From NCBI GenBank assembly GCA_010909165.1, contig VJWM01000223.1, positions 1-64,000 on the forward strand: DNA of 64,000 bases. The letters are read 5' to 3'. This document shows, one piece after another, positions 13,541 through 60,268 of this stretch. The position numbers were made by a program, and so were the translations under genes. The stretch is from Anthoceros angustus (lineage: Eukaryota; Plantae; Anthocerotophyta). Each line of letters starts with the position of its first letter. The first letter of the stretch is position 1. Under the pieces are notes generated by a model that saw nothing but the letters and a program-made list of their open reading frames with translations, was not told the DNA's origin and searched no databases.

Positions 13541-13559
13541 TTGTTGGCGTCCCGCCAAC

Positions 13560-26222: not shown

Positions 26223-26748
26223 AGCTCTTCTTATCTACTTTGTTGTCCCACCACATCGTAGGGTCGGAAAAATTGTTGCCACAAGAGCTCCCGCCCGGCC
26301 ACGACCATCGTGGAAAATCCTTCCCCACCCACACACTTTCGAAGGTGGAAGTCTTTGGGTTGCTCATCTTCTTTGCACAGGTTTGGCTGGTTACGATGCT
26401 TGACCCTTGAGGTGGCGTGCGTGGGAGCTCCTTGTAGAATCCACCTCGCTCGCCACTTTGTTGGGTCCACAAGGGATCCGGTTTCCATATTGTAGCCACG
26501 TTACGGGCACCGCCCTCGAAAGATGGAGTGAGGCGGACACAAACTACCTATGAGCGTGATAGATCGGCCGGAGGACACATGCCCTTCATGCACACCTCCC
26601 TTCCGGATCTGAGGCTAGTTTGCAACGGCCATCTGCAACTTTGCTCATCCTGGGCGAAAACTCCAACTTGGGCAGCAAGCTTGCGAGGCCTTGGTGGAAA
26701 GCTAGTTTGTGTGTGTGGCCTTGACCGCCTCACATTGCACTGCAATCA
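26223..26748 (-). pseudogene. OSB-PPR gene fragment, partial first copy cut by LTR end at 26222
   Basis: Contains LLWQQFF and DPTMWWDNKVDKKS, then the sequence switches to LTR. Confidence 0.6.
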
Positions 26749-27084
26749 AGGCCAAGGAACTTGGGCCTATGTACATAGGTATATCTTGATGTACCTATAT
26801 TATTGTCGAAGACCAAGGAACGTGGGGCTATATATGTATATGTTATATAAGTTACTTATATTATTGATAATCTTTGAGAAAAAATTTCATCCTAAGATTA
26901 TATAATAATTTTCATGATATAAATTACCGAGAACCAAGGAACATTAGGCTATCTATATATGCAAGTATATAGGTTGTTTTATTATTGCACAATCGCTGAT
27001 AGTTTTACAAAAGCTTGGTGGAAAGCTAGTTTCGCGAGTATTAAAAACCAAGCTAGCTAGTTTGTGTGAGAGTACCGAAAAACA

Positions 27085-28062
27085 ATGGACATGAATAATA
27101 CTGCCTATGCTCTCAATTCACGACATTTGCCCCAGTTGCGAAGATAGATGAAGGCGTCTGCGGAAATATTCAGGTTTAATCATGATATAATTAAAATTAT
27201 ACCTCTTGACAACGAGGGTGAGGAGCAACATCTTGAAGCGATAAACAATGAATTCGATCGCAGAGACTTTGGCCACCTTACAAGATCAGAGGCTCCTTTT
27301 GCTGCACTAATTCTTATGCAACAAATCCCATGCAATATGGGAAGGACCACTCTTTTCGAGTTTATTATTGCTAAGGCGCCGGTCGTGTCCTATGCAACAA
27401 GGTTTCCTCTAGAGTATCCACCTTGTCAAAGGTTCGGGATGATTGTACAAGAGGAGGCTGGGATTCCTTTGTCAAAATTCCAATTTTCACACAATGCGAA
27501 ATCAAAAGCATGTTATTGCAAGTAACTCTTGCTTTACACGTAGCACAAAAGCTTATGGATTCGAGCATCGTGACCTCCATACAAAAATATTCTTTTGACT
27601 TATCGAGATCAACAAAGTGTTGAATTCTATACCGTATGCAATAGAAAGAAAAAATCAAAACATACGGAATAAGGGTATCTATAATAGATTTCGGATTATC
27701 ACGTATGCAACGTGATACACAAGTCCTATTTAGCAAAGTGGCAAAATTTGAGCCGAGGATATCATTTCTGCACTTGGAATCGTGTGCACGAAATTGTGGG
27801 CTCAAATTGGGACCATAGTTTCCCTAAGATCAATGCGATATGGATCAATTATCTAACTCAAGTCGTTGCTGCAAAGCAGTTGAAAACCAAGAATTGCCCC
27901 TAAATTGCCTTCAACAATTATTTGCTTTTCTTTTGACGAGTAACATTGTGTAACAATGAGAGATTGGAAGAGACCGGTTTTCAAGACATGTGGCTAAAAG
28001 AAATGTCGAGTGAAGTCAAACTACATTCTAATTCTTATTCAAAAGTTAAGATGACATTGTAA
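27085..28062 (+). CDS. Haspin-like protein kinase, copy 1 (frameshifted in assembly)
   Basis: Consensus over copies: KIDEGASAEIFRFNHDIIKIIPLD ... INNEFLIA ... IKSMLLQVTLALHVAQKAYGFEHRDLHTK(N)ILL ... VSIIDFGLSRM ... WDHSFPKINAIWINYL ... DRFFEDMWL...MTL*. Matches Haspin hallmarks (FEHRDLHWGN, IIDF/YTLSR, W..SF..N.LWL.YL, DPFF.DM). Confidence 0.8.
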
Positions 28063-28437
28063 CCCAACGGTGAATTAGACGTACACTAAAGGTCGAGTGC
28101 ATAATTCCTTGCATTTTCTCTCAAAAGAATCCCTTGTATTCTCATTTTCACAAGGATAAGGTAAGAGGGCAGCTAGATGCAATAATTCCTTTTTCGATTC
28201 CTTGATAAAAAGAAAGTTGGGCGAGAGACTTTCTTCACTATAGCCATTAATTTTTATAAGTGTAAATAATTTTACAATTTTCAAACACGTGAATTTTTAT
28301 CTTCAAAGATCTAGTAATGTCATCGAGTTCTCTAGTTTGGTATGGTGGTTAGATCTCGTTCCCGCCCTGTGTCTGAATGATCGCACTATCCAAATACTCT
28401 AACCTGCACTTCCTTTGAGGAGTGACACGTTTCTCGC

Positions 28438-28669
28438 CATGAATTCATTGGATGGAACTCTGTGGTTAAGCAACCCTTCGGCTAGAACGCTACTGAGATG
28501 GGGTACCACTCACCTACCCAATTGCTCCGGGCCCTTGAAGTGACACAGAAGCCATGAGTTCATTGGCACTCCGTGGTTAAGCAACCCTCCGGTGCCCAAT
28601 TGCTCCTAGCCATGGCCCTTGGTGGCTCTGTTGATACCGTGAGCGTTCATTGGCACTCGTGGTCAAGTG
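28438..28669. repeat. Three imperfect ~90-115 bp repeats (ttcattgg...cgtggttaagcaaccc...cccaattgctcc), present in every full unit
   Basis: Motif starts at ~28444, ~28559, ~28646. The third copy is cut at the array junction but continues in the last unit (59848-59930). Confidence 0.8.
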
Positions 28670-30085
28670 GCGCAAAAGTCACATGCACTTCTGCCGGATT
28701 CCAAGTCGAGGCAAATGCACAAGCTTGAAAGACAGCCACAAAGCCGTGAGCATCCGCCTTCACACGATCTCGCATGTCATGATGCAGTGTATGGCCTCTT
28801 CAGTTTCCCATGTTCGAGTAAGCGGTGATGATGGAAAACCACATGAAGGCATATGGTTTCCCTACGTGAACACATCCATGGCCTCCTGACCTACCTCCAC
28901 TTGCATACATGCGCAACAAATGGTTCGCCAAGTATGCATGCGACTCTCCAAGTTTGTGATGATCATGAACTCGTCGCCCCACAAACAAATCCTTCACGGC
29001 TGCACATAGTTTTAACACATATACGAGACGGGAAATAGGACAATTTGCCAAGCCCGGAGATTCCGAGGCTGCGGCCTCGATAAGCTTCCCTGGCGGCGTA
29101 ACGTGATCACGGCGGTATTCTGCCATTTCCGATCTCACCGCGCTGCCGACCTCACGATTATCCGGAGCTCGGTGCAAGGAGACTCGAAGGATCGTGGGCG
29201 ACCCTGGAAAGAGGAGAGGAGAGGAGAGGAGGAGGCAAGGTAGCTCTCTCACATTGAGATGAGGCTTGGAGGTATTTATACCCTCCAGGCTCCTAGGAAG
29301 CTCCACAAGAAGCTCCTAGGAAGGAGCACAAGAAGCTTCCTAGTGATTAGCTTAAGCTAAACTAATGATACTTAACGACACCTAACTTAGACTAAGTGTA
29401 TTGGTCTAAGTACATTGCTTTAATACCCTTACGGACTCGCCATGAGCCATGTGCATATCCAAAGCAGCTGCTCGTCCACCCAAGTTGGCTTGAACATCTT
29501 TGTTTAACGAGGACCTCGCTCGCCACTTTGTTGTCCCACCACATCGTAGGGTCGGAAAAATTGTTGCCACAAGAGCTCTTCTTATCTACTTTGTTGTCCC
29601 ACCACATCGTAGGGTCGGAAAAATTGTTGCCACAAGAGCTCCCTCCCGCCACGACCATCGTGGAAAATCCTTCCCCACCCACACACTTTCGAAGGTGGAA
29701 GTCTGGGTTGCTCATCTTCTGGAGGTTTGGCTGGTTACCGGTGCTTGACCCGAGGTGGCGTGCGTGGGAGCTCCTTGTAGAATCCACCTCGCTCGCCACT
29801 TTGTTGGGTCCACAAGGGATCCGGTTTCCATATTGTAGCCACGTTACGGGCACCGCCCTCGAAGATGGAGCCGAGGCGGACACAAACTACCTATGGTGAT
29901 AGATCGGCGGAGGACACATGCCCTTCATGCACACCTCCCTTCCGGATCTGACTAGTTTGCAACCGCCATCTTGCAACTGCTCATCCTGGGCGAAACTCCA
30001 ACTTGGGCAGCAAGCTTGCGAGGCTCCTTTTGCTGCACTTGGAATCGTGTGCGAAATTGACCGCCTCACATTGCACCACCTGGAA
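28670..30085 (-). pseudogene. OSB (PDF-motif)-PLS PPR fusion fragment, copy A, solo-LTR interrupted and 3'-truncated
   Basis: PDF motif consensus WQQFF.DPTMWWDNKVDKKSS.PDF.K.S.E.L...PTWVDEQL, upstream of PPR motifs VY.VLKLCAAVKDLFVGRRVH / LANHLLRMYASGGRLQEAMDVF / WFSIITAYSKHGKPEEAIHLYHDMRRSGVKAD / FVAVFQACA..DLESGREVH. Confidence 0.75.
29186..29433 (-). mobile_element. ~250 bp solo LTR with 5 bp TSD GACTC (representative; present in 8 units)
   Basis: GACTC at 29181-29185 and 29434-29438. Ends resemble TG(T)AAGG...CCTTAC(A), garbled at CWG. Internal minus-strand TATAAATA (29273-29280) followed by a CT-rich tract. Absent, with a single GACTC, at 42463 and 57340. Confidence 0.65.
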
Positions 30086-30422
30086 GGCCAAGGAACTTGG
30101 GCCTATGTACATAGGTATATCTTGATGTACCTATATTATTGTCGAAGACCAAGGAACGTGGGGCTATATATATATATGTTATATAAGTTACTTATATTAT
30201 TGATAATCTTTGAGAAAAAATTTCATCCTAAGATTATATAATAATTTTCATGATATAAATTACCGAGAACCAAGGAACATTAGGCTATCTATATATGCAA
30301 GTATATAGGTTGTTTTTATTATTGCACAATCGCTGATAGTTTTACAAAAGCTTGGTGGAAAGCTAGTTTCGCAGAGTATTAAAAACCAAGCTAGCTAGTT
30401 TGTGTGAGAGTACCGAAAAACA

Positions 30423-31405
30423 ATGGACATGAATAATACTGCCTATGCTCTCAATTCACGACATTTGCCCCAGATTGCGAAGATAGATGAAGGCGTCTGC
30501 GGAAATATTCAGTTTAATCATGATATAATTAAAATTATACCTCTTGACAACGAGCGTGAGGAGCAACATCTTGAAGCGATAAACAATGAATTACGATCGC
30601 GAGACTTTGGCCACCTTACAAGATCAGAGGCTCCTTTTGCTGCACTAATTCTTATGCAACAAATCCCATGCAATATGGGAAGGACCACTCTTTTCCGAGT
30701 TTATTATTGCTAAGGCGCCAGTGTCCTATGCAACAAGGTTTCCTCTAGAGTATCCACCTTGTCAAAGGTTCGGGATGATTGTACAAGAGGAGGCTGGGAT
30801 TCCTTTGTCAAAATTCCAATTTCACACAATGCGGAAATCAAAAGCATGTTATTGCAAGTAACTCTTGCTTTACACGTAGCACAAAAGCTTATGGATTCGA
30901 GCATCGTGACCTCCATACAAAAATATTCTTTTGACTTATCGAGATCAACAAAGTGTTGAATTCTATACCGTATGCAATAGAAAGAAAAAATCAAAACATA
31001 CTAATAAGGGTATCTATAATAGATTTCGGATTATCACGTATGCAACGTGATACACAAGTCCTATTTAGCAAAGTGGCAAAATTTGAGCCGAGGGATATCA
31101 TTTGCTGCACTTGGAATCGTGTGCACGAAATTGTGGGCTCAAATTGGGACCATAGTTTCCCTAAGATCAATGCGATATGGATCAATTATCTAACTCAAGT
31201 CGTTGCTGCAAAGCAGTTGAAAACCAAGAATTGCCCCTAAATTGCCTTCAACAATTATTTGCTTTTCTTTTGAATGAGTAACATTGTGTAACACAACAGC
31301 AGAGATTGGAAGAGACCGGTTTTCGAAGACATGTGGCTAAAAGAAATGTCGAGTGAAGTCAAACTACATTCTAATTCTTATTCAAAAGTTAAGATGACAT
31401 TGTAA
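30423..31405 (+). CDS. Haspin-like protein kinase, copy 2
   Basis: Same motifs as copy 1; ORFs 30423..30713, 30759..30959, 30953..31240. Confidence 0.8.
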
Positions 31406-32002
31406 CCCAACGGTGAATTAGACGTACACTAAAGGTCGAGTGCATAATTCCTTGCATTTTCTCTCAAAAGAATCCCTTGTATTCTCATTTTCACAAGGAT
31501 AAGGTAAGAGGGCAGCTAGATGCAATAATTCCTTTTCGATTCCTTGATAAAAAGAAAGTTGGGCGAGACTTTCTTCACTATAGCCATTAATTTTTATAAG
31601 TGTAAATAATTTTACAATTTTCAAACACTGTGAATTTTTATCTTCAAAGATCTAGTAATGTCATCGAGTTCTCTAGTTTGGTATGGTGGTTAGATCTCGT
31701 TCCATACATGCGAATGATCGCACTATCCAAATACTCTAACCGCACTTCCTTTGAGGAGTGACACGTTTATCGCAATGAATTCATTGGATGGAACTCGTGG
31801 TTAAGCAACCCTTGGCTAGAACGCTCGAGATGGGGTACCACTCACCTACCCAATTGCTCGGGCCCTTGAAGTGACACGAAGCCATGAGTTCATTGGCACT
31901 CCGTGGTTAAGCAACCCTCCGGTGCCCAATTGCTCCTAGCCATGGCCCTTGGTGGCTGTTGATACCGTGAGAACGCGTTCATTGGCACTCCGTGGTCAAG
32001 TG

Positions 32003-33370: not shown

Positions 33371-33703
33371 AGGCCAAGGAACTTGGGCCTATGTACATAG
33401 GTATATCTTGATTACCTATATTATTGTCGAAGACCAAGGAACGATGGGGCTATATATATATATGTTATATAAGTTACTTATATTATTGATAATCTTTGAA
33501 AAATTTCATCCTAAGATTATATAATAATTTTCATGATATAAATTACGAGAACCAAGGAACATTAGGCTATCTATATATGCAAGTATATAGGTTGTTTTAT
33601 TATTGCACAATCGCTGATAGTTTTACAAAAGCTTGGTGGAAAGCTAGTTTCGCAGAGTATTAAAAACCAAGCTAGCTAGTTTGTGTGAGAGTACCGAAAA
33701 ACA

Positions 33704-34691
33704 ATGGACATGAATAATACTGCCTATGCTCTCAATTCACGACATTTGCCCCAGTTGCGAAGATAGATGAAGGCGCGTCTGCGGAAATATTCAGGTTTAA
33801 TCATGATATAATTAAAATTATACCTCTTGACAACGAGCGTGAGGAGCAACATCTTGAAGCGATAAACAATGAATTCGATCGCGAGACTTTGGCCACCTTA
33901 CAAGATGCAGAGGCTCCTTTTGCTGCACTAATTTCTTATGCAACAAATCCCATGCAATATGGGAAGGACCACTCTTTTCCGAGTTTATTATTGCTAAGGC
34001 GCCAGTGGGTGTCCTATGCAACAAGGTTTCCTCTAGAGTATCCACCTTGTCAAAGGTTCGGGATGATTGTACAAGAGGAGGTGGGATTCCTTTGTCAAAA
34101 TTCCAATTTCACACAATGCGGAAATCAAAAGCATGTTATTGCAAGTAACTCTTGCTTTACGTAGCACAAAAGCTTATGGATTCGAGCATCGTGACCTCCA
34201 TACAAAAATATTCTTTTGACTTATCGAGATCAACAAAGTGTTGAATTCTATACCGTATGCAATAGAAAGAAAAAATCAAAACATACGGAATAAGGATATC
34301 TATAATAGATTTGGATTATCACGTATGCAACGTGATACACAAGTCCTATTTAGCAAAGTGGCAAAATTTGAGCCGAGGGATATCATTTGCGCTGCACTTG
34401 GAATCGTGTGCACGAAATTGTGGGCTCAAATTGGGACCATAGTTTCCCTAAGATCAATGCGATATGGATCAATTATCTAACTCAAGTCGTTGCTGCAAAG
34501 CAGTTGAAAACCAAGAATTGCCCCTAAATTGCCTTCAACAATTATTTGCTTTTCTTTGGACGAGTAACATTGTGTAACACAACAGCGAGATTGGAAGAGA
34601 CCAGTTTTTCGAAGACATGTGGCTAAAAGAAATGTCGAGTGAAGTCAAACTACATTCTAATTCTTATTCAAAAGTTAAGATGACATTGTAA
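33704..34691 (+). CDS. Haspin-like protein kinase, copy 3
   Basis: Same motifs; shows GAAGGCGCGTCTGCGGAA (EGASAE) in frame. Confidence 0.8.
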
Positions 34692-35299
34692 CCCAACGGT
34701 GAATTAGACGTACACTAAAGGTCGAGTGCATAATTCCTTGCATTTTCTCTCAAAAGAATCCCTTGTATTCTCATTTTCACAAGGATAAGGTAAGAGGGCA
34801 ACTAGATGCAATAATTCCTTTTTCGATTCCTTGATAAAAAGAAAGTTGGGCGAGAGACTTTCTTCACTATAGCCATTAATTTTTATAAGTGTAAATAATT
34901 TTTACATTTTTCAAAGACTGTGAATTTTTATCTTCAAAGATCTAGTAATGTCATCGAGTTCTCTAGTTTGGTATGGTGGTTAGATCTCGTTCCCGCCCTG
35001 TGTCTGAATGATTGCACTATCCAAATACTCTAACCTGCACTTCTTTTGAGGAGTGACACGTTTGTCGCAATGAATTCATTGGATGGAACTCTGTGGTTAA
35101 GCAACCCTTCGGCTAGAATGCTACTGAGATGGGGTACCACTCACCTACCCAATTGCTCCGGGCCCTTGAAGTGACACGAAGCCATGAGTTCATTGGCACT
35201 CCGTGGTTAAGCAACCCTCCGGTGCCCAATTGCTCCTAGCCATGGCCCTTGGTGGCTCTGTTGTAATCGTGAGCGTTCATTGGCACTCGTGGTCAAGTG

Positions 35300-37041: not shown

Positions 37042-38031
37042 ATGGACATGAATAATACTGCCTATGCTCTCAATTCACGACATTTGCCCCAGTTGCGAAG
37101 ATAGATGAAGGCGCGTCTGCGGAAATATTCAGTTTAATCATGATATAATTAAAATTATACCTCTTGACAACGAGCGTGAGGAGCAACATCTTGAAGCGAT
37201 AAACAATGAATTCTTGATCGCATAGACTTTGGCCACCTTACAAGATGCAGAGGCTCCTTTTGCTGCACTAATTTCTTATGCAACAAATCCCATGCAATAT
37301 GGGAAGGACCACTCTTTTCCGAGTTTATTATTGCTAAGGCGCCGGTGGGTGTCCTATGCAACAAGGTTTCCTCTAGAGTATCCACCTTGTCAAAGGTTCG
37401 GGATGATTGTACAAGAGGAGGCTGGGATTCCTTTGTCAAAATTCCAATTTCACACAATGCGAAATCAAAAGCATGTTATTGCAAGTAACTCTTGCTTTAC
37501 ACGTAGCACAAAAGCTTATGGATTCGAGCATCGTGACCTCCATACAAAAATATTCTTTTGACTTATCGGAGATCAACAAAGTGTTGAATTCTATACCGTA
37601 TGCAATAGAAAGAAAAAATCAAAACATACGGAATAAGGGTATCTATAATAGATTTGGATTATCACGTATGCAACGTGATACACAAGTCCTATTTAGCAAA
37701 GTGGCAAAATTTGAGCCGAGGGATATCATTTGCGCTGCACTTGGAATCGTGTGCACGAAATTGTGGGCTCAAATTGGGACCATAGTTTCCCTAAGATCAA
37801 TGCGATATGGATCAATTATCTAACTCAAGTCGTTGCTGCAAAAGCAGTTGAAAACCAAGAATTGCCCCTAAATTGCCTTCAACAATTATTTGCTTTTCTT
37901 TGGACGAGTAACATTGTGTAACACAACAGAGATTGGAAGAGACCGGTTTTCAAGACATGTGGCTAAAAGAAATGTCGAGTGAAGTCAAACTACATTCTAA
38001 TTCTTATTCAAAAGTTAAGATGACATTGTAA
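37042..38031 (+). CDS. Haspin-like protein kinase, copy 4
   Basis: ORF 37229..37561 ends KAYGFEHRDLHTK. Confidence 0.8.
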
Positions 38032-40364: not shown

Positions 40365-41348
40365 ATGGACATGAATAATACTGCCTATGCTCTCAATTCA
40401 CGACATTTGCCCCAGTTGCGAAGATAGATGAAGGCGTCTGCGGAAATATTCAGGTTTAATCATGATATAATTAAAATTATACCTCTTGACAACGAGCGTG
40501 AGGAGCAACATCTTGAAGCGATAAACAATGAATTCTTGATCGCAGACTTTGGCCACCTTACAAGATGCAGAGGCTCCTTTTGCTGCACTAATTCTTATGC
40601 AACAAATCCCATGCAATATGGGAAGGACCACTCTTTTCCGAGTTTATTATTGCTAAGGCGCAGTGGGTGTCCTATGCAACAAGGTTTCCTCTAGAGTATC
40701 CACCTTGTCAAAGGTTCGGGATGATTGTACAAGAGGAGGCTGGGATTCCTTTGTCAAAATTCCAATTTTCACACAATGCAGAAATCAAAAGCATGTTATT
40801 GCAAGTAACTCTTGCTTTACACGTAGCACAAAAGCTTATGGATTCGAGCATCGTGACCTCCATACAAAAATATTCTTTTGACTTATCGAGATCAACAAAG
40901 TGTTGAATTCTATACCGTATGCAATAGAAAGAAAAAATCAAAACATACGGAATAAGGGTATCTATAATAGATTTCGGATTATCACGTATGCAACGTGATA
41001 CACAAGTCCTATTTAGCAAAGTGGCAAAATTTGAGCCGAGGGATATCATTTGCGCTGCACTTGGAATCGTGTGCGAAATTGTGGGCTCAAATTGGGACCA
41101 TAGTTTCCCTAAGATCAATGCGATATGGATCAATTATCTAACTCAAGTCGTTGCTGCAAAGCAGTTGAAAACCAAGAATTGCCCCTAAATTGCCTTCAAC
41201 AATTATTTGCTTTTCTTTTGAATGAGTAACATTGTGTAACAGCAGAGATTGGAAGAGACCGGTTTTCGAAGACATGTGGCTAAAAGAAATGTCGAGTGAA
41301 GTCAAACTACATTCTAATTCTTATTCAAAAGTTAAGATGACATTGTAA
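40365..41348 (+). CDS. Haspin-like protein kinase, copy 5
   Basis: Same motifs as copy 1. Confidence 0.8.
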
Positions 41349-41944: not shown

Positions 41945-43138
41945 GCGCAAAAGTCACAGTGCACTTCTCTGCGGATTCAAGTCCGAGGCAAATGCACAAG
42001 CTTGAAAGACAGCCACAAAGCCGTGAGCATCCGCCTTCACACGATCTCGCATGTCATGATGCAGTGTATGGCCTCTTCAGTTTCCATGTTCGAGTAAGCG
42101 GTGATGATGGAAAACCACATGAAGGCATATGGTTTCCCTACAGTGAACACATCCATGGCCTCCTGCAGCCTACCTCCACTTGCATACATGCGCAACAAAT
42201 GGTTCGCCAAGTATGCATGCGACTCGTACCAAGTTTGTGATAAGATCATGAACTCGTCGCCCCACAAACAAATCCTTCACGGCTGCACATAGTTTTAACA
42301 CGGCATATACGAGGCGGAAATAGGACAATTTTCCAAGCCCGGAGATTCCAGTACACCTCGATAAGCTTCCCTGGCGGCGTAACGTGATCACGGCGGTATT
42401 CTGACACCCATTTCCGATCTGCCGCTGCCGGCCTCACGATTAGCGGAGGCTCGGTGCAAGGAGACTCGCCATGAGCCATGCATATCCAAAAGCGTGCTCG
42501 TCCACCCAAGTTGGCTTGAACATCTTTGTTTAACGAGGACCTCGCTGGACCCCTTCCATGGGAATCGGGCGGCGGGGCTCTTCTTATCTACTTTGTTGTC
42601 CCACCACATCGTAGGGTCGGAAAAATTGTTGCCACAAGAGCTCCTTGTAGAATCCACCTCGCTCGCCACGACCATCATTGGAAAATCCTTCCCCACCACA
42701 CACTTTCGAAGGTGGAAGTCTTTGGGTTGCTCATCTTCTTTGGAGGTTTGGCTGGTTACCGATGCTTGACCCGAGGTGGCGTGCGTGGGAGCTCCTTGTA
42801 GAATCCACCTCGCTCGCCACTTTGTTGGGTCCACAAGGGATCCGGTTTCCATATTGTAGCCACGTTACAGGCACCGCCCTCGAAAGATGGAGCCGAGGCG
42901 GACACAAACTACCTATGAGCGTGATAGATCGGCCGGAGGACACATGCCCTTCATGCACACCTCCCTTCCGGATCTGACGCTAGTTTGCAACAGCCATCTT
43001 GCAACTGTTCATCCTGGGCGAAAACTCCAACTTGGGCAGCAAGCTTGAAAGACAGCCACAAAGCCGTGAGCATCCGCCTTCACACGATCTCGCATGTCAT
43101 GAATTCATTGGATGGAACCCTCACATTGCACCTGGCCA
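41945..43138 (-). pseudogene. OSB-PPR fragment, copy E (no solo LTR)
   Basis: Empty site gcaaggaGACTCgccatgag at 42463-42467. Confidence 0.7.
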
Positions 43139-43468: not shown

Positions 43469-44444
43469 ATGGACATGAATAATCCTATGCTCTCAATTCA
43501 CGACATTTGCCCCAGTTGCGAAGATAGATGAAGGCGTCTGCGGAAATATTCAGGTTTAATCATGATATAATTAAAATTATACCTCTTGACAACGAGCGTG
43601 AGGAGCAACATCTTGAAGCGATAAACAATGAATTCGATCGCAGACTTTGGCCACCTTACAAGATGCAGAGGCTCCTTTTGCTGCACTAATTCTTATGCAA
43701 CAAATCCCATGCAATATGGGAAGGACCACTCTTTTCCGAGTTTATTATTGCTAAGGCGCCGTCGTGTCCTATGCAACAAGGTTTCCTCTAGAGTATCCAC
43801 CTTGTCAAAGGTTCGGGATGATTGTACAAGAGGAGGCTGGGATTCCTTTGTCAAAATTCCAATTTTCACACAATGCGAAATCAAAAGCATGTTATTGCAA
43901 GCAACTCTTGCTTTACACGTAGCACAAAAGCTTATGGATTCGAGCATCGTGACCTCCATACAAAAATATTCTTTTGACTTATCTTTGGAGATCAACAAAG
44001 TGTTGAATTCTATACCGTATGCAATAGAAAGAAAAAATCAAAACATACGGAATAAGGGTATCTATAATAGATTTCGGATTATCACGTATGCAACGTGATA
44101 CACAAGTCCTATTTAGCAAAGTGGCAAAATTTGAGCCGAGGGATATCATTTGCTGCACTTGGAATCGTGTGCACGAAATTGTGGGCTCAAATTGGGACCA
44201 TAGTTTCCCTAAGATCAATGCGATATGGATCAATTATCTAACTCAAGTCGTTGCTGCAAAGCAGTTGAAAACCAAGAATTGCCCCTAAATTGCCTTCAAC
44301 AATTATTTGCTTTTCTTTGGGAGTAACATTGTGTAACACAGAGATTGGAAGAGACCGGTTTTCGAAGACATGTGGCTAAAAGAAATGTCGAGTGAAGTCA
44401 AACTACATTCTAATTCTTATTCAAAAGTTAAGATGACATTGTAA
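43469..44444 (+). CDS. Haspin-like protein kinase, copy 6
   Basis: Same motifs as copy 1. Confidence 0.8.
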
Positions 44445-46790: not shown

Positions 46791-47772
46791 ATGGACATGA
46801 ATAATACTGCCTATGCTCTCAATTCACGACATTTGCCCCAGTTGCGAAGATAGATGAAGGCGGCGTCTGCGGAAATATTCAGGTTTAATCATGATATAAT
46901 TAAAATTATACCTCTTGACAACGAGCGTGAGGAGCAACATCTTGAAGCGATAAACAATGAATTCTTGATCGCGAGACTTTGGCCACCTTACAAGATCAGA
47001 GGCTCCTTTTGCTGCACTAATTCTTATGCAACAAATCCCATGCAATATGGGAAGGACCACTCTTTTCCGAGTTTATTATTGCTAAGGCGCCGGTGGGTGT
47101 CCTATGCAACAAGGTTTCCTCTAGAGTATCCACCTTGTCAAAGGTTCGGGATGATTGTACAAGAGGAGGCTGGGATTCCTTTGTCAAAATTCCAATTTCA
47201 CACAATGCGAAATCAAAAGCATGTTATTGCAAGTAACTCTTGCTTTACGTAGCACAAAAGCTTATGGATTCGAGCATCGTGACCTCCATACAAAAATATT
47301 CTTTTGACTTATCGAGATCAACAAAGTGTTGAATTCTATACCGTATGCAATAGAAAGAAAAAATCAAAACATACGGAATAAGGGTATCTATAATAGATTT
47401 GGATTATCACGTATGCAACGTGATACACAAGTCCTATTTAGCAAAGTGGCAAAATTTGAGCCGAGGGATATCATTTTGCACTTGGAATCGTGTGCACGAA
47501 ATTGTGGGCTCAAATTGGGACCATAGTTTCCCTAAGATCAATGCGATATGGATCAATTATCTAACTCAAGTCGTTGCTGCAAAGCAGTTGAAAACCAAGA
47601 ATTGCCCCTAAATTGCCTTCAACAATTATTTGCTTTTGCTTTTGGACGAGTAACATTGTGTAACACAACAGAGATTGGAAGAGACCGGTTTTCAAGACAT
47701 GTGGCTAAAAGAAATGTCAGTGAAGTCAAACTACATTCTAATTCTTATTCAAAAGTTAAGATGACATTGTAA
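46791..47772 (+). CDS. Haspin-like protein kinase, copy 7
   Basis: Same motifs; C-terminal frame in ORF 47548..47772. Confidence 0.8.
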
Positions 47773-48368: not shown

Positions 48369-49797
48369 GCGCAAAAGTCACAGTGCACTTCTCTGCGGAT
48401 TCCAAGTCGAGGCAAATGCACAAGCTTGAAAGACAGCCACAAAGCCGTGAGCATCCGCCTTCACACACGATCTCGCATGTCATGCAGTGTATGGCCTCTT
48501 CGAGTTTCCCATGTTCGAGTAGCGGTGATGATGGAAAACCATATGAAGGCATATGGTTTCCCTACCGTGAACACATCCATGGCCTCCTGCACCTACCTCC
48601 ACTTGCATACATGCGCAACAAATGGTTCGCCAAGTATGCATGCGACTCGTACCAAGTTTGAGAAGATCATGAACTCGTCGCCCACAAACAAATCCTTCAC
48701 GGCTGCACATAGTTTTAACACGGCATATACGAGGCGGAAATAGGACAATTTGCCAAGCCCGGAGATTCCAGTGCAGCGGCCTCGATAAGCTTCCCTGGCG
48801 GCGTAGCGTGATCACGGCGGTATTCTGACACCCATTTCCGATCCTGCGCGCCGACCTCACGATTAGCGGAGCTCGGTGCAAGGAGACTCGAAGGATCGTG
48901 GATGGATCTGGAAAGAGGAGAGGAGGAGGAGGCAAGAGTAGCTCTCTCACATTGAGATGAGGCTTGGAGGTATTTATACCCTCCAGCAGCTCCTAGGAAG
49001 CTCCACAAGAAGCTCCTAGGAAGGAGCACAAGAAGCTTCCTAGTGATTAGCTTAAGCTAAACTAATGATACTTAACGACACCTAACTTAGACTAAGTGTA
49101 TTAGTCTAAGTACATTGGGCTTTAATACCCTTGACTCGCCATGAGCCATGTGCATATCCAAAGCAGCTGCTCGTCCACCCAAGTTGGCTTGAACATCTTT
49201 GTTTAACGGAGGACCTCTGGACCCTTCATAATCAGGCGGCGAGCTCTTCTTATCTACTTTGTTGTCCCACCACATCGTAGGGTCGGAAAAATTGTTGCCA
49301 CAAGAGCTCCTTGTAGAATCCACCTCGCTCGCCACGACCATATTTGAAAATCCTTCCCCACCACACACTTTGAAGGTGGAAGTCTTTGGGTTGCTCATCT
49401 TCGCACTGGAGGTTTGGCTGGTTACGTGCTTGACCCACGAGGTGGCGTGCGTGGGAGCTCCTTGTAGAATCCACCTCGCCACTTTGTTGGGTCCACAAGG
49501 GATCCGGTTTCCATATTGTAGCCACGTTACGGGCACCGCCCTCGAAGATGGGTGAGGCGGACACAAACTACCTATGAGCGTGATAGATCAGCGGAGGACA
49601 CATGCCCTTCATGCACACCTCCCTTCCGGATCTGACGCTAGTTTGCGCCATCTTGCAACTGTTCATCCTGAACGAAAACTCCAACTTGGGCCTATGTACA
49701 TAGGTATATCTTGATTGTACAAGAGGAGGCTGGGATTCCTTTGTCAAAATTCCAATTTCACACAATGCGAAATTGACCGCCTCACATTGCACCAGCA
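48369..49797 (-). pseudogene. OSB-PPR fragment, copy G (with solo LTR)
   Basis: Same motifs as copy A. Confidence 0.7.
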
Positions 49798-50135: not shown

Positions 50136-51115
50136 ATGGACATGAATAATACGCCTATGCTCTCAATTCACGACATTTGCCCCAGTTGCGAAGATAGATG
50201 AAGGCGTCTGCGGAAATATTCAGTTTAATCATGATATAATTAAAATTATACCTCTTGACAACGAGCGTGAGGAGCAACATCTTGAAGCGATAAACAATGA
50301 ATTCTTGATCGCGAGACTTTGGCCACCTTACAAGATGCAGAGGCTCCTTTTGCTGCACTAATTTCTTATGCAACAAATCCCATGCAATATGGGAAGGACC
50401 ACTCTTTTCCGAGTTTATTATTGCTAAGGCGCCGGTGGGTGTCCTATGCAACAAGGTTTCCTCTAGAGTATCCACCTTGTCAAAGGTTCGGGATGATTGT
50501 ACAAGAGGAGGCTGGGATTCCTTTGTCAAAATTCCAATTTCACACAATGCAGAAATCAAAAGCATGTTATTGCAAGTAACTCTTGCTTTACACGTAGCAC
50601 AAAAGCTTATGGATTCGAGCATCGTGACCTCCATACAAAAATATTCTTTTGACTTATCGAGATCAACAAAGTGTTGAATTCTATACCGTATGCAATAGAA
50701 AGAAAAAATCAAAACATACGGAATAAGGGTATCTATAATAGATTTCGGATTATCACGTATGCAACGTGATACACAAGTCCTATTTAGCAAAGTGGCAAAA
50801 TTTGAGCCGAGGGATATCATTTCTGCACTTGGAATCGTGTGCGAAATTGTGGGCTCAAATTGGGACCATAGTTTCCCTAAGATCAATGCGATATGGATCA
50901 ATTATCTAACTCAAGTCGTTGCTGCAAAGCAGTTGAAAACCAAGAATTGCCCCTAAATTGCCTTCAACAATTATTTGCTTTTCTGGACGAGTAACATTGT
51001 GTAACACAACAGAGATTGGAAGAGACCAGTTTTCGAAGACATGTGGCTAAAAGAAATGTCGAGTGAAGTCAAACTACATTCTAATTCTTATTCAAAAGTT
51101 AAGATGACATTGTAA
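50136..51115 (+). CDS. Haspin-like protein kinase, copy 8
   Basis: Same motifs as copy 1. Confidence 0.8.
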
Positions 51116-53088: not shown

Positions 53089-53422
53089 AGGCCAAGGAAC
53101 TTGGGCCTATGTACATAGGTATATCTTGATGTACCTATATTATTGTCGAAGACCAAGGAACGTGGGGCTATATATGTATATGTTATATAAGTTACTTATA
53201 TTATTGATAATCTTTGAGAAAAATTTCATCCTAAGATTATATAATAATTTTCATGATATAAATTACCGAGAACCAAGGAACATTAGGCTATCTATATATG
53301 CAAGTATATAGGTTGTTTTATTATTGCACAATCGCTGATAGTTTTACAAAAGCTTGGTGGAAAGCTAGTTTCAGAGTATTAAAAACCAAGCTAGCTAGTT
53401 TGTGTGAGAGTACCGAAAAACA

Positions 53423-53744
53423 ATGGACATGAATAATACGCCTATGCTCTCAATTCACGACATTTGCCCCAGTTGCGAAGATAGATGAAGGCGTCTGGAA
53501 ATATTCAGGTTTAATCATGATATAATTAAAATTATACCTCTTGACAACGAGCGTGAGGAGCAACATCTTGAAGCGATAAACAATGAATTCGATCGCGAGA
53601 CTTTGGCCACCTTACAAGATGCGAGGCTCCTTTTGCTGCACTAATTTCTTATGCAACAAATCCCATGCAATATGGGAAGGACCACTCTTTTCCGAGTTTA
53701 TTATTGCTAAGGCGCCGGTCGTGTCCTATGCAACAAGGTTTCCT
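53423..53744 (+). pseudogene. Haspin-like kinase, copy 9, 3' two-thirds deleted
   Basis: caacaaGGTTTCCT joins directly to acgtgaacacatcc (PPR segment). Confidence 0.75.
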
Positions 53745-54893
53745 ACGTGAACACATCCATGGCCTCCTGCAGCCTACCTCCACTTGCATACATGCGCAAC
53801 AAATGGTTCGCCAAGTATGCATGACTCAAGTTTGATAAGATCATGAACTCGTCGCCCCACAAACAAATCCTTCCACAGCTGCACATAGTTTTAACACGGC
53901 ATATACGAGACGGGAAATAGGACAATTTTCCAAGCCCGAGATTCCGAGCTGCAGCCTCGATGGCTTCCCTGGCGGCGTAACGTGATCACGGCGGTATTCT
54001 GACACCCATTTCCGATCACGCACCCGGCCTCACGATTATCGGAGAGCTCGGTGCAAGGAGACTCAAGGATCGTGGGGTGCATCTTGTGGAAAGAGGAGAG
54101 AGGAGAGGAGGAGGAGGCAAGAGTAGCTCTCACATTGAGATGAGGCTTGGAGGTGCACCCTCCAGCAGGCTCCTAAGCTCCAGCTCCTAGGAAGGAGCAC
54201 GAAGCTTCCTAGTGATTAGCTTAAGCTAAACTAATGATACTTAACGACACCTAACTTAGACTAAGTGTATTAGTCTAAGTACATTGAGCTTTAATACCCA
54301 CCACTGCCATGAGCCATGTGCATATCCAAAGAAGCAGTGCTCGTCCACCCAAGTTGGCTTGAACATCGAGGACCTCTGGACCCTTCGGAAAATCTCCTCT
54401 TATCTCGTTGTCCCACCACATCGTAGGGTCGGAAAAATTGTTGCCACAAGAGCTCCGCTCCACGACCATCTGGAAAATCCTTCCCCACCCACACACTTTC
54501 GAAAGGTGGAAGTGGGTTGCTCATCTTCTGGAGGTTTGGCTGGTTACCGTGCTTGACCCGAGGTGGCGTGCGTGGGAGCTCCTTGTAGAATCCACCTCGC
54601 TCGCCACTTTGTTGGGTCCACAAGGGATCCGGTTTCCATATTGTAGCCACGTTACAGCACCGCCTCGAAAGATGGGAGGCGGACACAAACTACCTATGAG
54701 CGTGATAGATCGCCGGAGGACACATGCCCTTCATGCACACCTCCCTTCCAGATCTGACGCTAGTTTGCAACCTCATTTGCAACCTGTTCATCCTGGGCGA
54801 AACTCCAACTTGGGCAGCAAGCTTATGCGAGGCTCCTTTTGCTGCACTTGGAATCGTGTGCGAAATTGACCGCCTCACATTGCACCCCACCCG
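53745..54893 (-). pseudogene. OSB-PPR fragment, copy I (with solo LTR, further truncated)
   Basis: Same motifs, ending at EAMDVFT. Confidence 0.7.
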
Positions 54894-55227
54894 AAGGCCA
54901 AGGAACTTGGGCCTATGTACATAGGTATATCTTGATGTACCTATATTATTGTCGAAGACCAAGGAACGTGGGGCTATATATGTATATGTTATATAAGTTA
55001 CTTATATTATTGATAATCTTTGAGAAAAATTTCATCCTAAGATTATATAATAATTTTCATGATATAAATTACGAGAACCAAGGAACATTAGGCTATCTAT
55101 ATATGCAAGTATATAGGTTGTTTTATTATTGCACAATCGCTGATAGTTTTACAAAAGCTTGGTGGAAAGCTAGTTTCAGAGTATTAAAAACCAAGCTAGC
55201 TAGTTTGTGTGAGAGTACCGAAAAACA

Positions 55228-56209
55228 ATGGACATGAATAATACGCCTATGCTCTCAATTCACGACATTTGCCCCAGTTGCGAAGATAGATGAAGGCGTC
55301 TGGAAATATTCAGGTTTAATCATGATATAATTAAAATTATACCTCTTGACAACGAGCGTGAGGAGCAACATCTTGAAGCGATAAACAATGAATTCGATCG
55401 CGAGACTTTGGCCACCTTACAAGATGCAGAGGCTCCTTTTGCTGCACTAATTTCTTATGCAACAAATCCCATGCAATATGGGAAGGACCACTCTTTTCCG
55501 AGTTTATTATTGCTAAGGCGCCGGTCGTGTCCTATGCAACAAGGTTTCCTCTAGAGTATCCACCTTGTCAAAGGTTCGGGATGATTGTACAAGAGGAGGC
55601 TGGGATTCCTTTGTCAAAATTCAATTTCACACAATGCGAAATCAAAAGCATGTTATTGCAAGTAACTCTTGCTTTACACGTAGCACAAAAGCTTATGGAT
55701 TCGAGCATCGTGACCTCCATACAAAAATATTCTTTTGACTTATCTTTGGAGATCAACAAAGTGTTGAATTCTATACCGTATGCAATAGAAAGAAAAAATC
55801 AAAACATACGGAATAAGGGTATCTAATAGATTTGGATTATCACGTATGCAACGTGATACACAAGTCCTATTTAGCAAAGTGGCAAAATTTGAGCCGAGGG
55901 ATATCATTTCGCTGCACTTGGAATCGTGTGCACGAAATTGTGGGCTCAAATTGGGACCATAGTTTCCCTAAGATCAATGCGATATGGATCAATTATCTAA
56001 CTCAAGTCGTTGCTGCAAAGCAGTTGAAAACCAAGAATTGCCCCTAAATTGCCTTCAACAATTATTTGCTTTTCTTTGGACGAGTAACATTGTGTAACAC
56101 AACAGAGATTGGAAGAGACCGGTTTTTCGAAGACATGTGGCTAAAAGAAATGTCGAGTGAAGTCAAACTACATTCTAATTCTTATTCAAAAGTTAAGATG
56201 ACATTGTAA
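55228..56209 (+). CDS. Haspin-like protein kinase, copy 10
   Basis: Same motifs; gaccggtttttcgaagacatgtgg (DRFFEDMW) in frame. Confidence 0.8.
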
Positions 56210-56813
56210 CCCAACGGTGAATTAGACGTACACTAAAGGTCGAGTGCATAATTCCTTGCATTTTCTCTCAAAAGAATCCCTTGTATTCTCATTTTCACAA
56301 GGATAAGGTAAGAGGGCAACTAGATGCAATAATTCCTTTTCGATTCCTTGATAAAAAGAAAGTTGGGCGAGACTTTCTTCACTATAGCCATTAATTTTTA
56401 TAAGTGTAAATAATTTTTACAATTTTCAAAGACGTGAATTTTTATCTTCAAAGATCTAGTAATGTCATCGAGTTCTCTAGTTTGGTATGGTGGTTAGATC
56501 TCGTTCATACAATATGCGAATGATTGCACTATCCAAATACTCTAACCGCACTTCCTTTGAGGAGTGACACGCTTGTCGCAATGAATTCATTGGATGGAAC
56601 TACGTGGTTAAGCAACCCTTGGCTAGAATGCTCGAGATGGGGTACCACTCACCTACCCAATTGCTCCGGGCCCTTGAAGTGACACAGAAGCCATGAGTTC
56701 ATTGGCACTCCGTGGTTAAGCAACCCTCCGGTGCCCAATTGCTCCTAGCCATGGCCCTTGGTGGCTTTGTTATGATACCGTGAGAACGTTCATTGGCACT
56801 CCGTGGTCAAGTG

Positions 56814-57965
56814 GCGCAAAAAGTCACAGTGCACTTCTCTGCCGGATTCCAAGTCTGAGGCAAATGCACAAGCTTGAAAGACAGCCACAAAGCCGTGAGC
56901 ATCCGCCTTCACACCTGATCTACGCATGTCATGGTACAGGTGTATGGCCTCTTCAGGTTTCCCATGTTTAGAGTATGCGGTGATGATGGAAAACCACATG
57001 AAGGCATATGGTTTCCCTACCGTGAACACATCCATGGCCTCCTGCAGCCTACCTCCACTTGCATACATGCGCAACAAATGGTTCGCCAAGTATGCATGCG
57101 ACTATACCAAGTTTGTGATGATCATGAACTCGTCGCCCACAAACAAATCCTTCCGGCTGCACATAGTTTTAACACGGCATATACCGAGGCGGAAATAGGA
57201 CAATTTTCCAAGCCCCGGAGATTCCAGGCTGCAGCCTCGATAAGCTTCCCTGGCGGCGTAACGTGATCACGGTATTGACCCATTTCCGATCCTGCACGCC
57301 TGCCCGGCCTCACGATTAGCGGAGAGCTCGGTGCAAGGAGACTCGCCATGAGCCATGTGCATATCCAAAGCAGCTGCTCGTCCACCCAAGTTGGCTTGAA
57401 CATCTTTGTTTAACGAGAGGACCTCTTGGACCCCTTCCGCCGAATCGGTGACGGGAGCTCTTCTTATCTACTTTGTTGTCCCACCACATCGTAGGGTCCA
57501 GAAAAATTGTTGCCACAAGAGCTCTGCTCGGACGACCATCGTTGGAAAATCCTTCCCCACCACACACTTTACGAAAGGTGGAAGTCTTTGGGTTGCTCAT
57601 CTTCTTTGGAGGTTTGGCTGGTTACGTGCTTGACCGAGGTGGCGTGCGTGGGAGCTCCTTGTAGAATCCACCTCGCTCGCCACTTTGTTGGGTCCACAAG
57701 GGATCCGGTTTCCATATTGTAGCCACGTTCGACCGCCTCGAAGATGGAGTGAGGCGGACACAAACTACCTATGAGCGTGATAGATCGGCCGGAGGACACA
57801 TGCCCTTCATGCACACCTCCCTTCCAGATCTGACGCTAGTTTGCAACTGCCGCAACTGTTCATCCTGGGCGAAAACTCCAACTTGGGCAGCAAGCTTGCG
57901 AGGCTCCTTTTGCTGCACTTGGAATCGTGTGCGAAATTGACCGCCTCACATTGCACCCATGGCCA
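56814..57965 (-). pseudogene. OSB-PPR fragment, copy J (no solo LTR; PDF motif tail reads through into PPR)
   Basis: ORF 57122..57403 runs PTWVDEQL...GKLIEAA...SVYAVLKLCAA in one frame. ORF 56790..57089 is a clean PLS PPR stretch. Confidence 0.8.
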
Positions 57966-58300
57966 AGGCCAAGGAACTTGGGCCTATGTACATAGGTATA
58001 TCTTGATGTACCTATATTATTGTCGAAGACCAAGGAACGTGGGGCTATATATGTATATGTTATATAAGTTACTTATATTATTGATAATCTTTGAGAAAAA
58101 TTTCATCCTAAGATTATATAATAATTTTCATGATATAAATTACCGAGAACCAAGGAACATTAGGCTATCTATATATGCAAGTATATAGGTTGTTTTATTA
58201 TTGCACAATCGCTGATAGTTTTACAAAAGCTTGGTGGAAAGCTAGTTTGCAGAGTATTAAAAACCAAGCTAGCTAGTTTGTGTGAGAGTACCAAAAAACA

Positions 58301-59272
58301 ATGGACATGAATAATACTGCCTATGCTCTCAATTCACGACATTTGCCCCAGTTGCGAAGATAGATGAAGGCGTCTGCGGAAATATTCAGTTTAATCATGA
58401 TATAATTAAAATTATACCTCTTGACAACGAGCGTGAGGAGCAACATCTTGAAGCGATAAACAATGAATTCGATCGCAGACTTTGGCCACCTTACAAGATC
58501 AGAGGCTCCTTTTGCTGCACTAATTTCTTATGCAACAAATCCCATGCAATATGGGAAGGACCACTCTTTTCCGAGTTTATTATTGCTAAGGCGCGGTCGT
58601 GTCCTATGCAACAAGGTTTCCTCTAGAGTATCCACCTTGTCAAAGGTTCGGGATGATTGTACAAGAGGAGGCTGGGATTCCTTTGTCAAAATTCCAATTT
58701 CACACAATGCGAAATCAAAAGCATGTTATTGCAAGTAACTCTTGCTTTACACGTAGCACAAAAGCTTATGGATTCGAGCATCGTGACCTCCATACAAAAA
58801 TATTCTTTTGACTTATCGAGATCAACAAAGTGTTGAATTCTATACCGTATGCAATAGAAAGAAAAAATCAAAACATACGGAATAAGGGTATCTAATAGAT
58901 TTGGATTATCACGTATGCAACGTGATACACAAGTCCTATTTAGCAAAGTGGCAAAATTTGAGCCGAGGGATATCATTTACGCACTTGGAATCGTGTGCGA
59001 AATTGTGGGCTCAAATTGGGACCATAGTTTCCCTAAGATCAATGCGATATGGATCAATTATCTAACTCAAGTCGTTGCTGCAAAGCAGTTGAAAACCAAG
59101 AATTGCCCCTAAATTGCCTTCAACGATTATTTGCTTTTCTTTGGACGAGTAACATTGTGTAACACAACAGAGATTGGAAGAGACCAGTTTTCAAGACATG
59201 TGGCTAAAAGAAATGTCGAGTGAAGTCAAACTACATTCTAATTCTTATTCAAAAGTTAAGATGACATTGTAA
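58301..59272 (+). CDS. Haspin-like protein kinase, copy 11 (last; adjoins unique flank)
   Basis: Same motifs as copy 1. Confidence 0.8.
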
Positions 59273-60268
59273 CCAACGGTGAATTAGGCGTACACTAAAG
59301 GTCGAGTGCATAATTCCTTGCATTTTCTCTCAAAAGAATCCCTTGTATTCTCATTTTCACAAGGATAAGGTAAGAGGGCAGCTAGATGCAATAATTCCTT
59401 TTCGATTCCTTGATAAAAAGAAAGTTGGGCGAGACTTTCTTCACTATAGCCATTAATTTTTATAAGTGTAAATAATTTTTACAATTTTCAAACACGTGAA
59501 TTTTTATCTTCAAAGATCTAGTAATGTCATCGAGTTCTCTAGTTTGGTATGGTGGTTAGATCTCGTTCCATACAATATGCGAATGATCGCACTATCCAAA
59601 TACTCTAACTGCACTTCCTTTGAGGGTGACACGTTTCTCGCCATGAATTCATTGGATGGAACTACGTGGTTAAGCAACCCTTCTAGAACGCTCGAGATGG
59701 GGTACCACTCACCTACCCAATTGCTCCGGGCCCTTGAAGTGACACAGAAGCCATGAGTTCATTGGCACTCCGTGGTTAAGCAACCCTCCGGTGCCCAATT
59801 GCTCCTAGCCATGGCCCTTGGTGGCTCTGTTATGATACCATGAGAACGTTCATTGGCTCTCCGTGGTCAAGTGATCCTCCTCTGGTGCCCAATTACTCCG
59901 GGCCATGGCCCTTGGTGGCCTGTTTGTTATGATTAAAAGGGACCTCAAAAACAAGTTCGTAATGTGATGTGAGTGTTTGTCGTTTATTTATTTTATTTTA
60001 CGGGAGGGTAGATTGGCGCGGAAGAATACTTTATTTTATAGGAAGAATACTTTATTTTATAGGAGCATAGAAGAATCCTTGCATGGAAATCTAACAAGCC
60101 CACCCCATAGGGTGAGAGGACATGAATTTTTAATATCAATCCTTCTTCCAAAGGATGTTGCTTTGTAATATAAAATCTATTAGACATGAGGAAACCCATC
60201 CCAATAATTATCCACATTAACTGTGATCTACACTTATAAGAATATCAATATAGGGGCTGGCCTCCCTA

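What the first reader, a model, noticed from the sequence alone, without database searches (positions are those of the whole stretch)
26223..59873. 34 kb head-to-tail amplification whose only complete gene is a Haspin-like histone kinase
Seen: 11 near-identical units; AT-rich parts are almost invariant, implying very recent amplification or homogenisation. The repeat junction truncates the PPR gene but leaves the kinase and its upstream region whole. Known: Haspin phosphorylates H3T3 to position the chromosomal passenger complex at inner centromeres and is usually low-copy in plants. Inference: candidate dosage-selected or selfish (segregation-distorting) amplicon, or a neutral gene-bearing macrosatellite. 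True copy number may be collapsed or inflated by assembly.
Basis: partly seen in the sequence, partly recalled or inferred. Interest (0 to 1): 0.82.

Follow-up and report, generated by a model that had tools for sequence, protein, structure and literature searches.

The report
Silenced array of divergent Haspin-like genes
A hornwort-type plant genome really carries at least ten head-to-tail copies of a 3.3-kb block holding a fast-evolved, intron-free relative of the cell-division kinase Haspin, but the block looks methylated and silent and is one of many such gene arrays in this genome, so nothing here shows that it was selected or that it biases inheritance.

Summary
The array is real: 26,223-59,873, a 3.32-kb unit, 10 complete kinase copies and one partial. 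A short-read contig matching the unit consensus is about 25-fold deeper than flank contigs (rough figure).

The 3-6% differences between units are mostly nanopore noise. They are indel-rich and 7-8-fold enriched at CG/CHG sites but not at CHH or GpC, which implies the gene body is methylated. Elsewhere units differ by at most about 0.3%.

No copy is open as written. Both short-read corrections shown inside the ORF restore the frame; five -1 breaks common to the copies sit in homopolymers and remain unresolved.

The protein (about 325 aa, kinase domain only) groups with plant Haspins on a very long branch. Catalytic residues are kept; the Gly-loop, DYT motif and inferred H3-binding segment are eroded. 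The one probable-RNA run shows nothing over it. The amplification junction truncates a PDF-PPR gene.

Earlier notes (unchecked) report a normal haspin, dispersed intronless haspin-likes and many similar methylated gene arrays on other DNA of this genome (probably Anthoceros angustus).

Verdict: a young, probably silenced gene-bearing macrosatellite. Drive or dosage selection is unsupported, but reproductive tissue is untested.

The parts
26223..59873 (.). Tandem array, unit about 3.32 kb, about 10.1 periods; arbitrary-phase unit starts 26223, 29574, 32862, 36192, 39511, 42577, 45927, 49242, 52577, 54394, 57456
27085..28062 (+). Intronless kinase-only Haspin-like gene, copy 1 (about 325 codons, frame-broken as assembled)
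30423..31405 (+). Haspin-like gene, copy 2
33704..34691 (+). Haspin-like gene, copy 3
37042..38031 (+). Haspin-like gene, copy 4
40365..41348 (+). Haspin-like gene, copy 5; its piece 40928-41185 was used for the database searches
43469..44444 (+). Haspin-like gene, copy 6
46791..47772 (+). Haspin-like gene, copy 7
50136..51115 (+). Haspin-like gene, copy 8
53423..53744 (+). Partial kinase copy, cut by a jump of about 1.45 kb at a 7-nt microhomology (real deletion or consensus artefact)
55228..56209 (+). Haspin-like gene, copy 9 (complete)
58301..59272 (+). Haspin-like gene, copy 10 (complete); short-read insertions at 58388 and 58499 restore its frame
28670..30050 (-). 5' part of a PLS-class PPR gene with an N-terminal OSB-type PDF-like motif (WWDN), head-to-head with the kinase and truncated at the amplification junction; example copy, repeated in each unit
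   Evidence: member of a very large family
29187..29430 (.). 247-bp LTR-like insertion in the PPR gene, flanked by a 5-6-nt direct repeat; present in 8 units, empty site at 42463 and 57340
28659..28673 (.). Amplification junction (also near 32002, 35299, 38626, 41944, 45047, 48368, 51713, 56813)
59757..59924 (.). 94-bp tandem repeat running from the last unit into the right flank; the original, unamplified continuation, spanned by a flank-depth short-read contig (59847-60221)
43036..43118 (.). Mosaic patch built from other parts of the unit, joined at microhomologies of up to about 9 nt (also 49683-49773, 29520-29578 and other unit ends): consensus-calling artefact over a noisy CG-rich segment

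Best explanation
A young gene-bearing macrosatellite, silenced in the vegetative plant. A copy of a fast-evolving, intronless, kinase-only Haspin offshoot came to lie head-to-head with a PDF-PPR gene; it is probably a retro- or transposon-captured derivative of the plant's own haspin (inferred). A 3.3-kb segment, from inside the PPR gene to a small tandem repeat behind the kinase, was duplicated and then expanded by unequal exchange or rolling-circle copying to at least 10 and perhaps about 25 near-identical copies (array shown; mechanism inferred). The array is CG+CHG methylated through the kinase ORF and not detectably transcribed in thallus (methylation inferred from the error pattern; silence from one probable-RNA run). 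The ORF is probably still open and encodes a catalytically competent kinase that is unlikely to be a faithful H3T3 writer (inferred). The amplification reflects a genome-wide tendency of this genome, not selection on Haspin dosage.
For: Array and junction anatomy. Short-read contig 59217-59402 equals the unit consensus at depth 257 against 7-11.5 for flank contigs, and a flank-depth contig spans the right junction. Unit differences are 7-8-fold enriched at CG/CHG, 0 of 938 circular shifts reach that value, GpC control 0.0%, CHH 0.6% in the ORF; clean-context differences 20 of 6680. In A. agrestis CG+CHG methylation with almost no CHH marks TEs and non-expressed genes, while expressed gene bodies lack non-CG methylation (10.1101/2022.10.21.513199). 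X2 has zero cover over 58079-59851 although it covers PPR paralogues. Plant-side placement with branch length 2.95 against a median of 0.51. The DFG change and a 5-6-residue loss are seen in the alignments. Earlier notes list ELF1, TFIIB, OTU, PLATZ, ALY, eIF5A, RING-H2 and SAUR arrays (unchecked).
Against: The kinase lineage shows past constraint: 29 of 45 near-invariant haspin columns are kept, against 38 of 215 variable ones, and no in-frame stop is needed in the model. X2 is only guessed to be RNA, and the published RNA is from sterile vegetative tissue (PMC7027989). 9.3% of methylated (P2) hornwort genes are expressed in sporophytes. Methylation was not measured. Contig depth is not a copy number by the tool's own warning.
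Confidence: 0.62

Rival explanations
1. Ampliconic reproductive gene: the array lies on a sex or accessory chromosome, or in facultative heterochromatin, and is switched on only in gametangia or the sporophyte, where many copies supply a specialised kinase. This would resemble the multicopy genes of the Marchantia male chromosome (own knowledge; the papers were not held).
For: Catalytic residues retained over a very long branch; ORF probably open; the probable species is dioecious and only a sterile single-sex thallus was sequenced; some methylated hornwort genes are sporophyte-expressed.
Against: No expression or linkage data. Many unrelated genes show the same array form (unchecked notes). 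Half of the unit is a dead PPR fragment, as expected of an unselected segment.
Confidence: 0.14
2. Pseudogene array: the kinase was already inactivated by shared homopolymer frameshifts before amplification, so all copies are dead.
For: Four frame breaks are the same in 10 of 10 units (A4, A5, A6, C4 runs) and a fifth, N-terminal one falls at a C4 run. No short-read row confirmed or corrected these sites; contig cover of 58670-59063 is low and the table was truncated. Outside the array A/T runs show no deficit of long runs (p = 0.31).
Against: All five are one-base shortfalls in runs of four or more, the typical nanopore error; no in-frame stops or other shared lesions. A T-run at 59398 undercalled in 6 of 10 units is corrected by short reads, and both displayed corrections in the ORF restore the frame. 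G/C runs of five or more are mildly depleted (p = 0.02).
Confidence: 0.13
3. Selfish segregation distorter: amplified Haspin-like kinase alters H3T3 phosphorylation and CPC loading to bias chromosome transmission at meiosis.
For: Haspin's role at centromeres (10.1101/2024.05.21.595243); rapid protein evolution and amplification are typical of conflict genes (general knowledge).
Against: The H3-binding part of the activation segment is shortened and substituted; the long N-terminal region is missing; the gene body appears methylated; no transcript seen. All four spores of a hornwort meiosis survive, so centromere-type drive has no obvious asymmetry to exploit (own knowledge).
Confidence: 0.05
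4. The multi-copy state is largely an artefact of assembly or library amplification from one or two real copies.
For: The contig is unpolished, with microhomology mosaics, an exact 82-bp duplication and other local duplications.
Against: Each unit carries its own errors; short-read depth over the unit is an order of magnitude above the flank; CG/CHG-specific errors point to native, unamplified DNA; the probable source used a ligation kit on genomic DNA.
Confidence: 0.04

Closest known systems
Haspin/GSG2 kinases (Pfam PF12330; human HASPIN, PDB 4OUC/2VUW; bryophyte and lycophyte haspins P0003-P0009)
   Same: Whole-domain homology (local HMM 134 bits; only haspin hit in the PDB); beta-3 lysine, alphaC glutamate, FEHRDLH, Asn, IID..LSR and the W..P..N..W..YL C-lobe motifs kept.
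   Different: Only 26-31% identical to bryophyte haspins; intronless; no long N-terminal region; first Gly-loop glycine is Asp; HWG changed; DYT/DFT is DFG; 5-6 residues missing in the segment matching human 707-718; at least 10 tandem copies instead of a low copy number.
Gene-bearing macrosatellites and tandem gene arrays (D4Z4/DUX4-type methylated arrays, own knowledge; tandem clusters hold at least 9.82% of A. angustus genes, PMC7027989)
   Same: Multi-kb head-to-tail units, near identity, an intronless gene in each unit, apparent heterochromatic methylation.
   Different: Cargo is a Haspin-like kinase plus a truncated PPR gene; no expression stage or phenotype known.
Ampliconic genes of the Marchantia male (Y/V) chromosome, such as ORF162 (own knowledge; papers not held)
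   Same: Whole small genes amplified in kb-scale repeats in a dioecious bryophyte.
   Different: Sex linkage and reproductive expression are untested here.
Cluster P2 genes of Anthoceros agrestis (10.1101/2022.10.21.513199)
   Same: Short, TE-surrounded genes with CG and CHG methylation, not expressed in the gametophyte.
   Different: Methylation here is inferred from sequencing errors, not measured; different species.

Membership tests
Haspin kinases | Homology to the Haspin kinase domain over both lobes | tested here: met
   Local haspin HMM 134 bits over positions 24-302; an 86-aa piece hits only haspins in phmmer, PDB and Atlas searches; Pfam PF12330 E 9e-4, below the cut-off because it is a fragment
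Haspin kinases | Catalytic residues (beta-3 Lys, alphaC Glu, HRD Asp, Asn, Mg-binding Asp) | tested here: met
   on a model joined with X at each frame break
Haspin kinases | DYT/DFT in place of DFG | tested here: not met
   DFG in the copies that read in frame there
Haspin kinases | Intact glycine-rich loop | tested here: not met
   First Gly is Asp in all units; the third position lies in a noisy CG patch and is Gly or Ala
Haspin kinases | Acidic H3-tail pocket in the atypical activation segment (two aspartates contact H3K4, PMC5291243; numbering D707/D714/Q718 from own knowledge) | tested here: not met
   5-6-residue gap and loss of the conserved D, Q, Y, R, M columns; sequence inference only, no structure predicted
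Haspin kinases | Long N-terminal regulatory region | tested here: not met
   ATG lies about 18 codons before the Gly-loop with in-frame stops upstream and no exon-like homology upstream
Haspin kinases | Phosphorylates H3T3 and recruits the CPC | not testable with these tools
   needs a biochemical assay
Gene-bearing macrosatellite | Head-to-tail multi-kb units, near identical, really multi-copy | tested here: met
Gene-bearing macrosatellite | Heterochromatic methylation and silencing | tested here: inconclusive
   Strong indirect signal and no cover in the probable-RNA run, but no direct 5mC data
Gene-bearing macrosatellite | Copy-number variation between individuals | not testable with these tools
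   only one sample holds the sequence
Meiotic driver or sex-chromosome amplicon | Germline expression, sex linkage, transmission distortion | not testable with these tools
   one single-sex vegetative sample
Endogenous large-DNA-virus gene | Closest relatives in viruses | tested here: not met
   No relative in IMG/VR or JGI metagenome contigs; best hits are bryophyte and lycophyte haspins; viral Atlas clusters score lower, 0.89

The most novel reading that the evidence does not exclude
Hornworts carry a fast-evolving, mobile-element-borne lineage of kinase-only Haspin derivatives, and this array is an ampliconic locus, possibly on the sex chromosome, that is derepressed in gametangia or at meiosis and alters histone-tail phosphorylation (CPC loading, or release from silencing) to favour its own transmission.
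Probability: 0.07. Interest if true: 0.8.

Novelty: new variant of a known kind. Interest (0 to 1): 0.33.

Why it matters
If the best reading holds, it is a modest result: one more methylated gene array, though it documents a Haspin offshoot in a land plant (intronless, kinase-only, DFG-type, very long branch) for which I found no description in the searched library. The broader lead is the pattern in earlier notes: this genome repeatedly amplifies divergent copies of chromatin and transcription genes (TFIIB, ELF1, ALY, PLATZ, OTU, Haspin) into methylated arrays, which deserves a test for sex- or accessory-chromosome location. If the array were germline-expressed or sex-linked it would be a testable candidate for genetic conflict acting through a mitotic histone kinase.

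Tried and rejected
Viral origin: no relative in IMG/VR or JGI metagenome contigs. Fungal or animal transfer: the model falls on the plant side of a 98/93 branch, though its long branch makes the exact place unsure and no AU test was run. Search for close relatives with the N-lobe/hinge piece: no candidate (limited by the length window). Rfam: nothing in the window. Higher-order repeat or unit genealogy: no reliable diagnostic substitutions, noise dominates. Real rearrangements at 43036-43118 and 49683-49773: rejected as microhomology mosaics, since the same kinase-derived patch replaces one noisy PPR segment in five units. Genome-wide A/T homopolymer truncation: not detected, so the shared breaks stay unresolved. 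The joined protein model has no reference, so it was used only in local scripts and was not sent to search or folding tools; no structure was predicted. The haspin structure papers and the Marchantia amplicon papers were not held.
Full report
Observation. Self-comparison shows a head-to-tail array from 26,223 to 59,873 with a period of about 3.3 kb; the majority consensus is 3,317 bp. Eleven kinase start sites and ten stops give ten complete kinase copies and one partial copy. The natural boundary of the amplified segment lies behind the kinase. Inside the array a 94-bp tandem repeat runs straight into the interior of a minus-strand PPR gene (nine junctions), whereas at 59,873 the same repeat continues into unique flank. 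The left edge at 26,223 cuts a unit inside the PPR gene's 5' part and abuts unrelated DNA and retroelements, so it is an insertion site or an assembly join, not the original end; no unit sequence occurs in 1-26,222.

Sequence quality. Each unit differs from the consensus by 3.1-5.8%, with as many indels as substitutions or more. The LTR pair in the left flank is just as indel-rich (89%, 135 gap openings). Differences cluster at CG and CHG sites. In the kinase ORF the rates are 3.9% (CG), 5.3% (CHG), 0.6% (CHH only) and 0.0% (GpC control): an 8-fold enrichment reached by none of 938 circular shifts. In clean contexts only 20 of 6,680 unit-bases differ. The units are therefore almost identical, and the noise is what older nanopore basecalling gives on methylated native DNA (inference). 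Short patches at 43,036-43,118, 49,683-49,773 and several unit ends are mosaics of other parts of the unit joined at microhomologies of up to about 9 nt, which I read as consensus artefacts. The 1.45-kb jump at 53,744 and the two empty sites of the 247-bp insert may be real or of the same kind; I could not decide.

Is the amplification real? One public DNA run (X1) holds the unit. Laid on 56,700-62,600, its flank contigs have depth 7-11.5, one of them spanning the right junction with no substitutions. A 187-bp contig at 59,217-59,402, whose two differences from the window both restore the unit consensus, has depth 257; other unit variants are supported at 90-260. The tool warns that contig depth is not a copy number, so I take this only as showing roughly ten to twenty-five times flank level: the array is not inflated and may be collapsed. 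Two low-depth contigs about 92-94% alike point to a close dispersed paralogue. X1 may be the sample the window was assembled from, so it is no independent individual.

The kinase. An 86-residue piece hits Pfam Haspin_kinase weakly, bryophyte and lycophyte haspins best among 1.8 billion proteins, only human haspin in the PDB and haspin clusters in the Atlas. A model joined with X at each break, used in local scripts only, is about 325 residues, 26-31% identical to bryophyte haspins, and scores 134 bits against a local haspin profile. In the tree it sits with plant haspins, separated from fungal and animal ones by a 98/93 branch, on a branch of 2.95 against a median of 0.51. No viral or metagenomic relative was found. 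Near-invariant haspin columns are kept at 29 of 45 against 38 of 215 variable columns, so the lineage was under constraint as a kinase. It is intronless, lacks the N-terminal region, has Asp for the first Gly-loop glycine and DFG for DYT/DFT, and has lost 5-6 residues plus conserved residues in the segment matching human 707-724. Two aspartates of haspin hold H3K4 (PMC5291243); that they lie in this segment is from my own knowledge. Faithful H3T3 recognition is therefore doubtful, which is an inference from sequence.

Is the ORF intact? No copy is open as written. The two short-read insertions displayed inside the ORF, at 58,388 and 58,499, both restore the haspin frame. Four breaks are the same in all ten units and a fifth lies near the start; each is a one-base shortfall at a run of four to six identical bases. 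Short reads correct a comparable T-run that six of ten units undercall, but the five sites themselves were not shown, and A/T runs are not generally depleted. I put an open ORF at about 75%.

The passenger. The other half of the unit is the 5' part of a PLS-class PPR gene with an OSB-type WWDN motif, head-to-head with the kinase across some 300-400 bp of AT-rich DNA. It belongs to a very large family (summed depth above 10,000). It is cut at the junction and, in eight units, interrupted by a 247-bp LTR-like insert with short direct repeats.

Expression and context. X2, guessed to be RNA from the same sample, covers PPR paralogues but has nothing over the kinase or the AT-rich half of the unit. 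Earlier notes name the genome as Anthoceros angustus (unchecked). Its published assembly fits: nanopore ligation library, wtdbg-1.2.8, 119 Mb, one sterile single-sex gametophyte of a dioecious species, PPR expansion and many tandem clusters (PMC7027989). In A. agrestis, expressed gene bodies have no non-CG methylation, CHH is nearly absent, and short TE-surrounded genes with CG+CHG methylation are silent in the gametophyte, 9.3% of them being expressed in sporophytes (10.1101/2022.10.21.513199). The error signature here matches that silent class. Unchecked notes also report an intron-bearing haspin elsewhere, several dispersed intronless haspin-likes near CACTA repeats or thymidine kinase genes, and many other gene arrays (ELF1, TFIIB, OTU4, PLATZ, ALY, eIF5A, RING-H2, SAUR), some with the same methylation-linked breaks and no transcripts. 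I reached the methylation reading before seeing those notes; their agreement is not independent evidence.

Mechanism and verdict. Shown: the array, its junction, its multi-copy state, near identity of units, haspin ancestry and the altered motifs. Inferred: origin as a retro- or transposon-captured haspin, expansion by unequal exchange or rolling circle, methylation, silence, probable catalytic competence with changed substrate. Best reading: a young, silenced gene-bearing macrosatellite (0.62). Rivals: reproductive-tissue amplicon (0.14), shared pseudogene (0.13), segregation distorter (0.05), artefact (0.04). Literature searches found no report of amplified or transposon-borne haspins in plants, within the limits of the library. 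It works like a methylated tandem gene array; the protein is a Haspin-derived kinase that fails several defining Haspin features. Interest 0.33.

Noticed in passing
window 9640-24286: Gypsy element on the minus strand with LTRs of about 3.9-4.7 kb (9640-13526 and 19543-24286); the LTR pair is about 89-91% alike, gap-dominated, so its age cannot be read from this assembly.
   Followed up: partly
window 10359-10532; 20793-22552; 25498-25637 and 26083-26219: Local duplications: an exact 82-bp repeat, an 896-bp repeat inside one LTR only, and a 140-bp repeat 585 bp apart that ends at the array's left edge. The exact one is suspicious as a stitching artefact in such noisy sequence.
   Followed up: partly
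window 3600-9450: Second Gypsy element on the plus strand; earlier notes say it carries a cytosine methyltransferase (5650-6500) and a PHD finger (9200-9335). Two ORF pieces I scanned gave no Pfam hit.
   Followed up: partly
window 1-3000: Copia-like pol region on the minus strand (read by eye from the sequence).
   Followed up: no
window 58862-59088 and 59173-59356 (run X1, records 1 and 2): Low-depth contigs about 92-94% alike: a close paralogue of the kinase locus elsewhere in the genome.
   Followed up: no
window 57537-57981 (run X2, record 16): A PPR-paralogue contig ends where the GC-rich PPR 5' part meets the AT-rich spacer, as a transcript start would; a hint that X2 is RNA.
   Followed up: no
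window 60260-60547 and 60984-61273: A 290-bp direct repeat 725 bp apart (about 85%) with short inverted repeats nearby in the right flank; possibly transposon remnants.
   Followed up: no
window 30077-30296 (each unit): Three degenerate repeats, spaced 61 and 121 bp, in the AT-rich spacer upstream of the kinase; possible promoter or transposon subterminal repeats.
   Followed up: no
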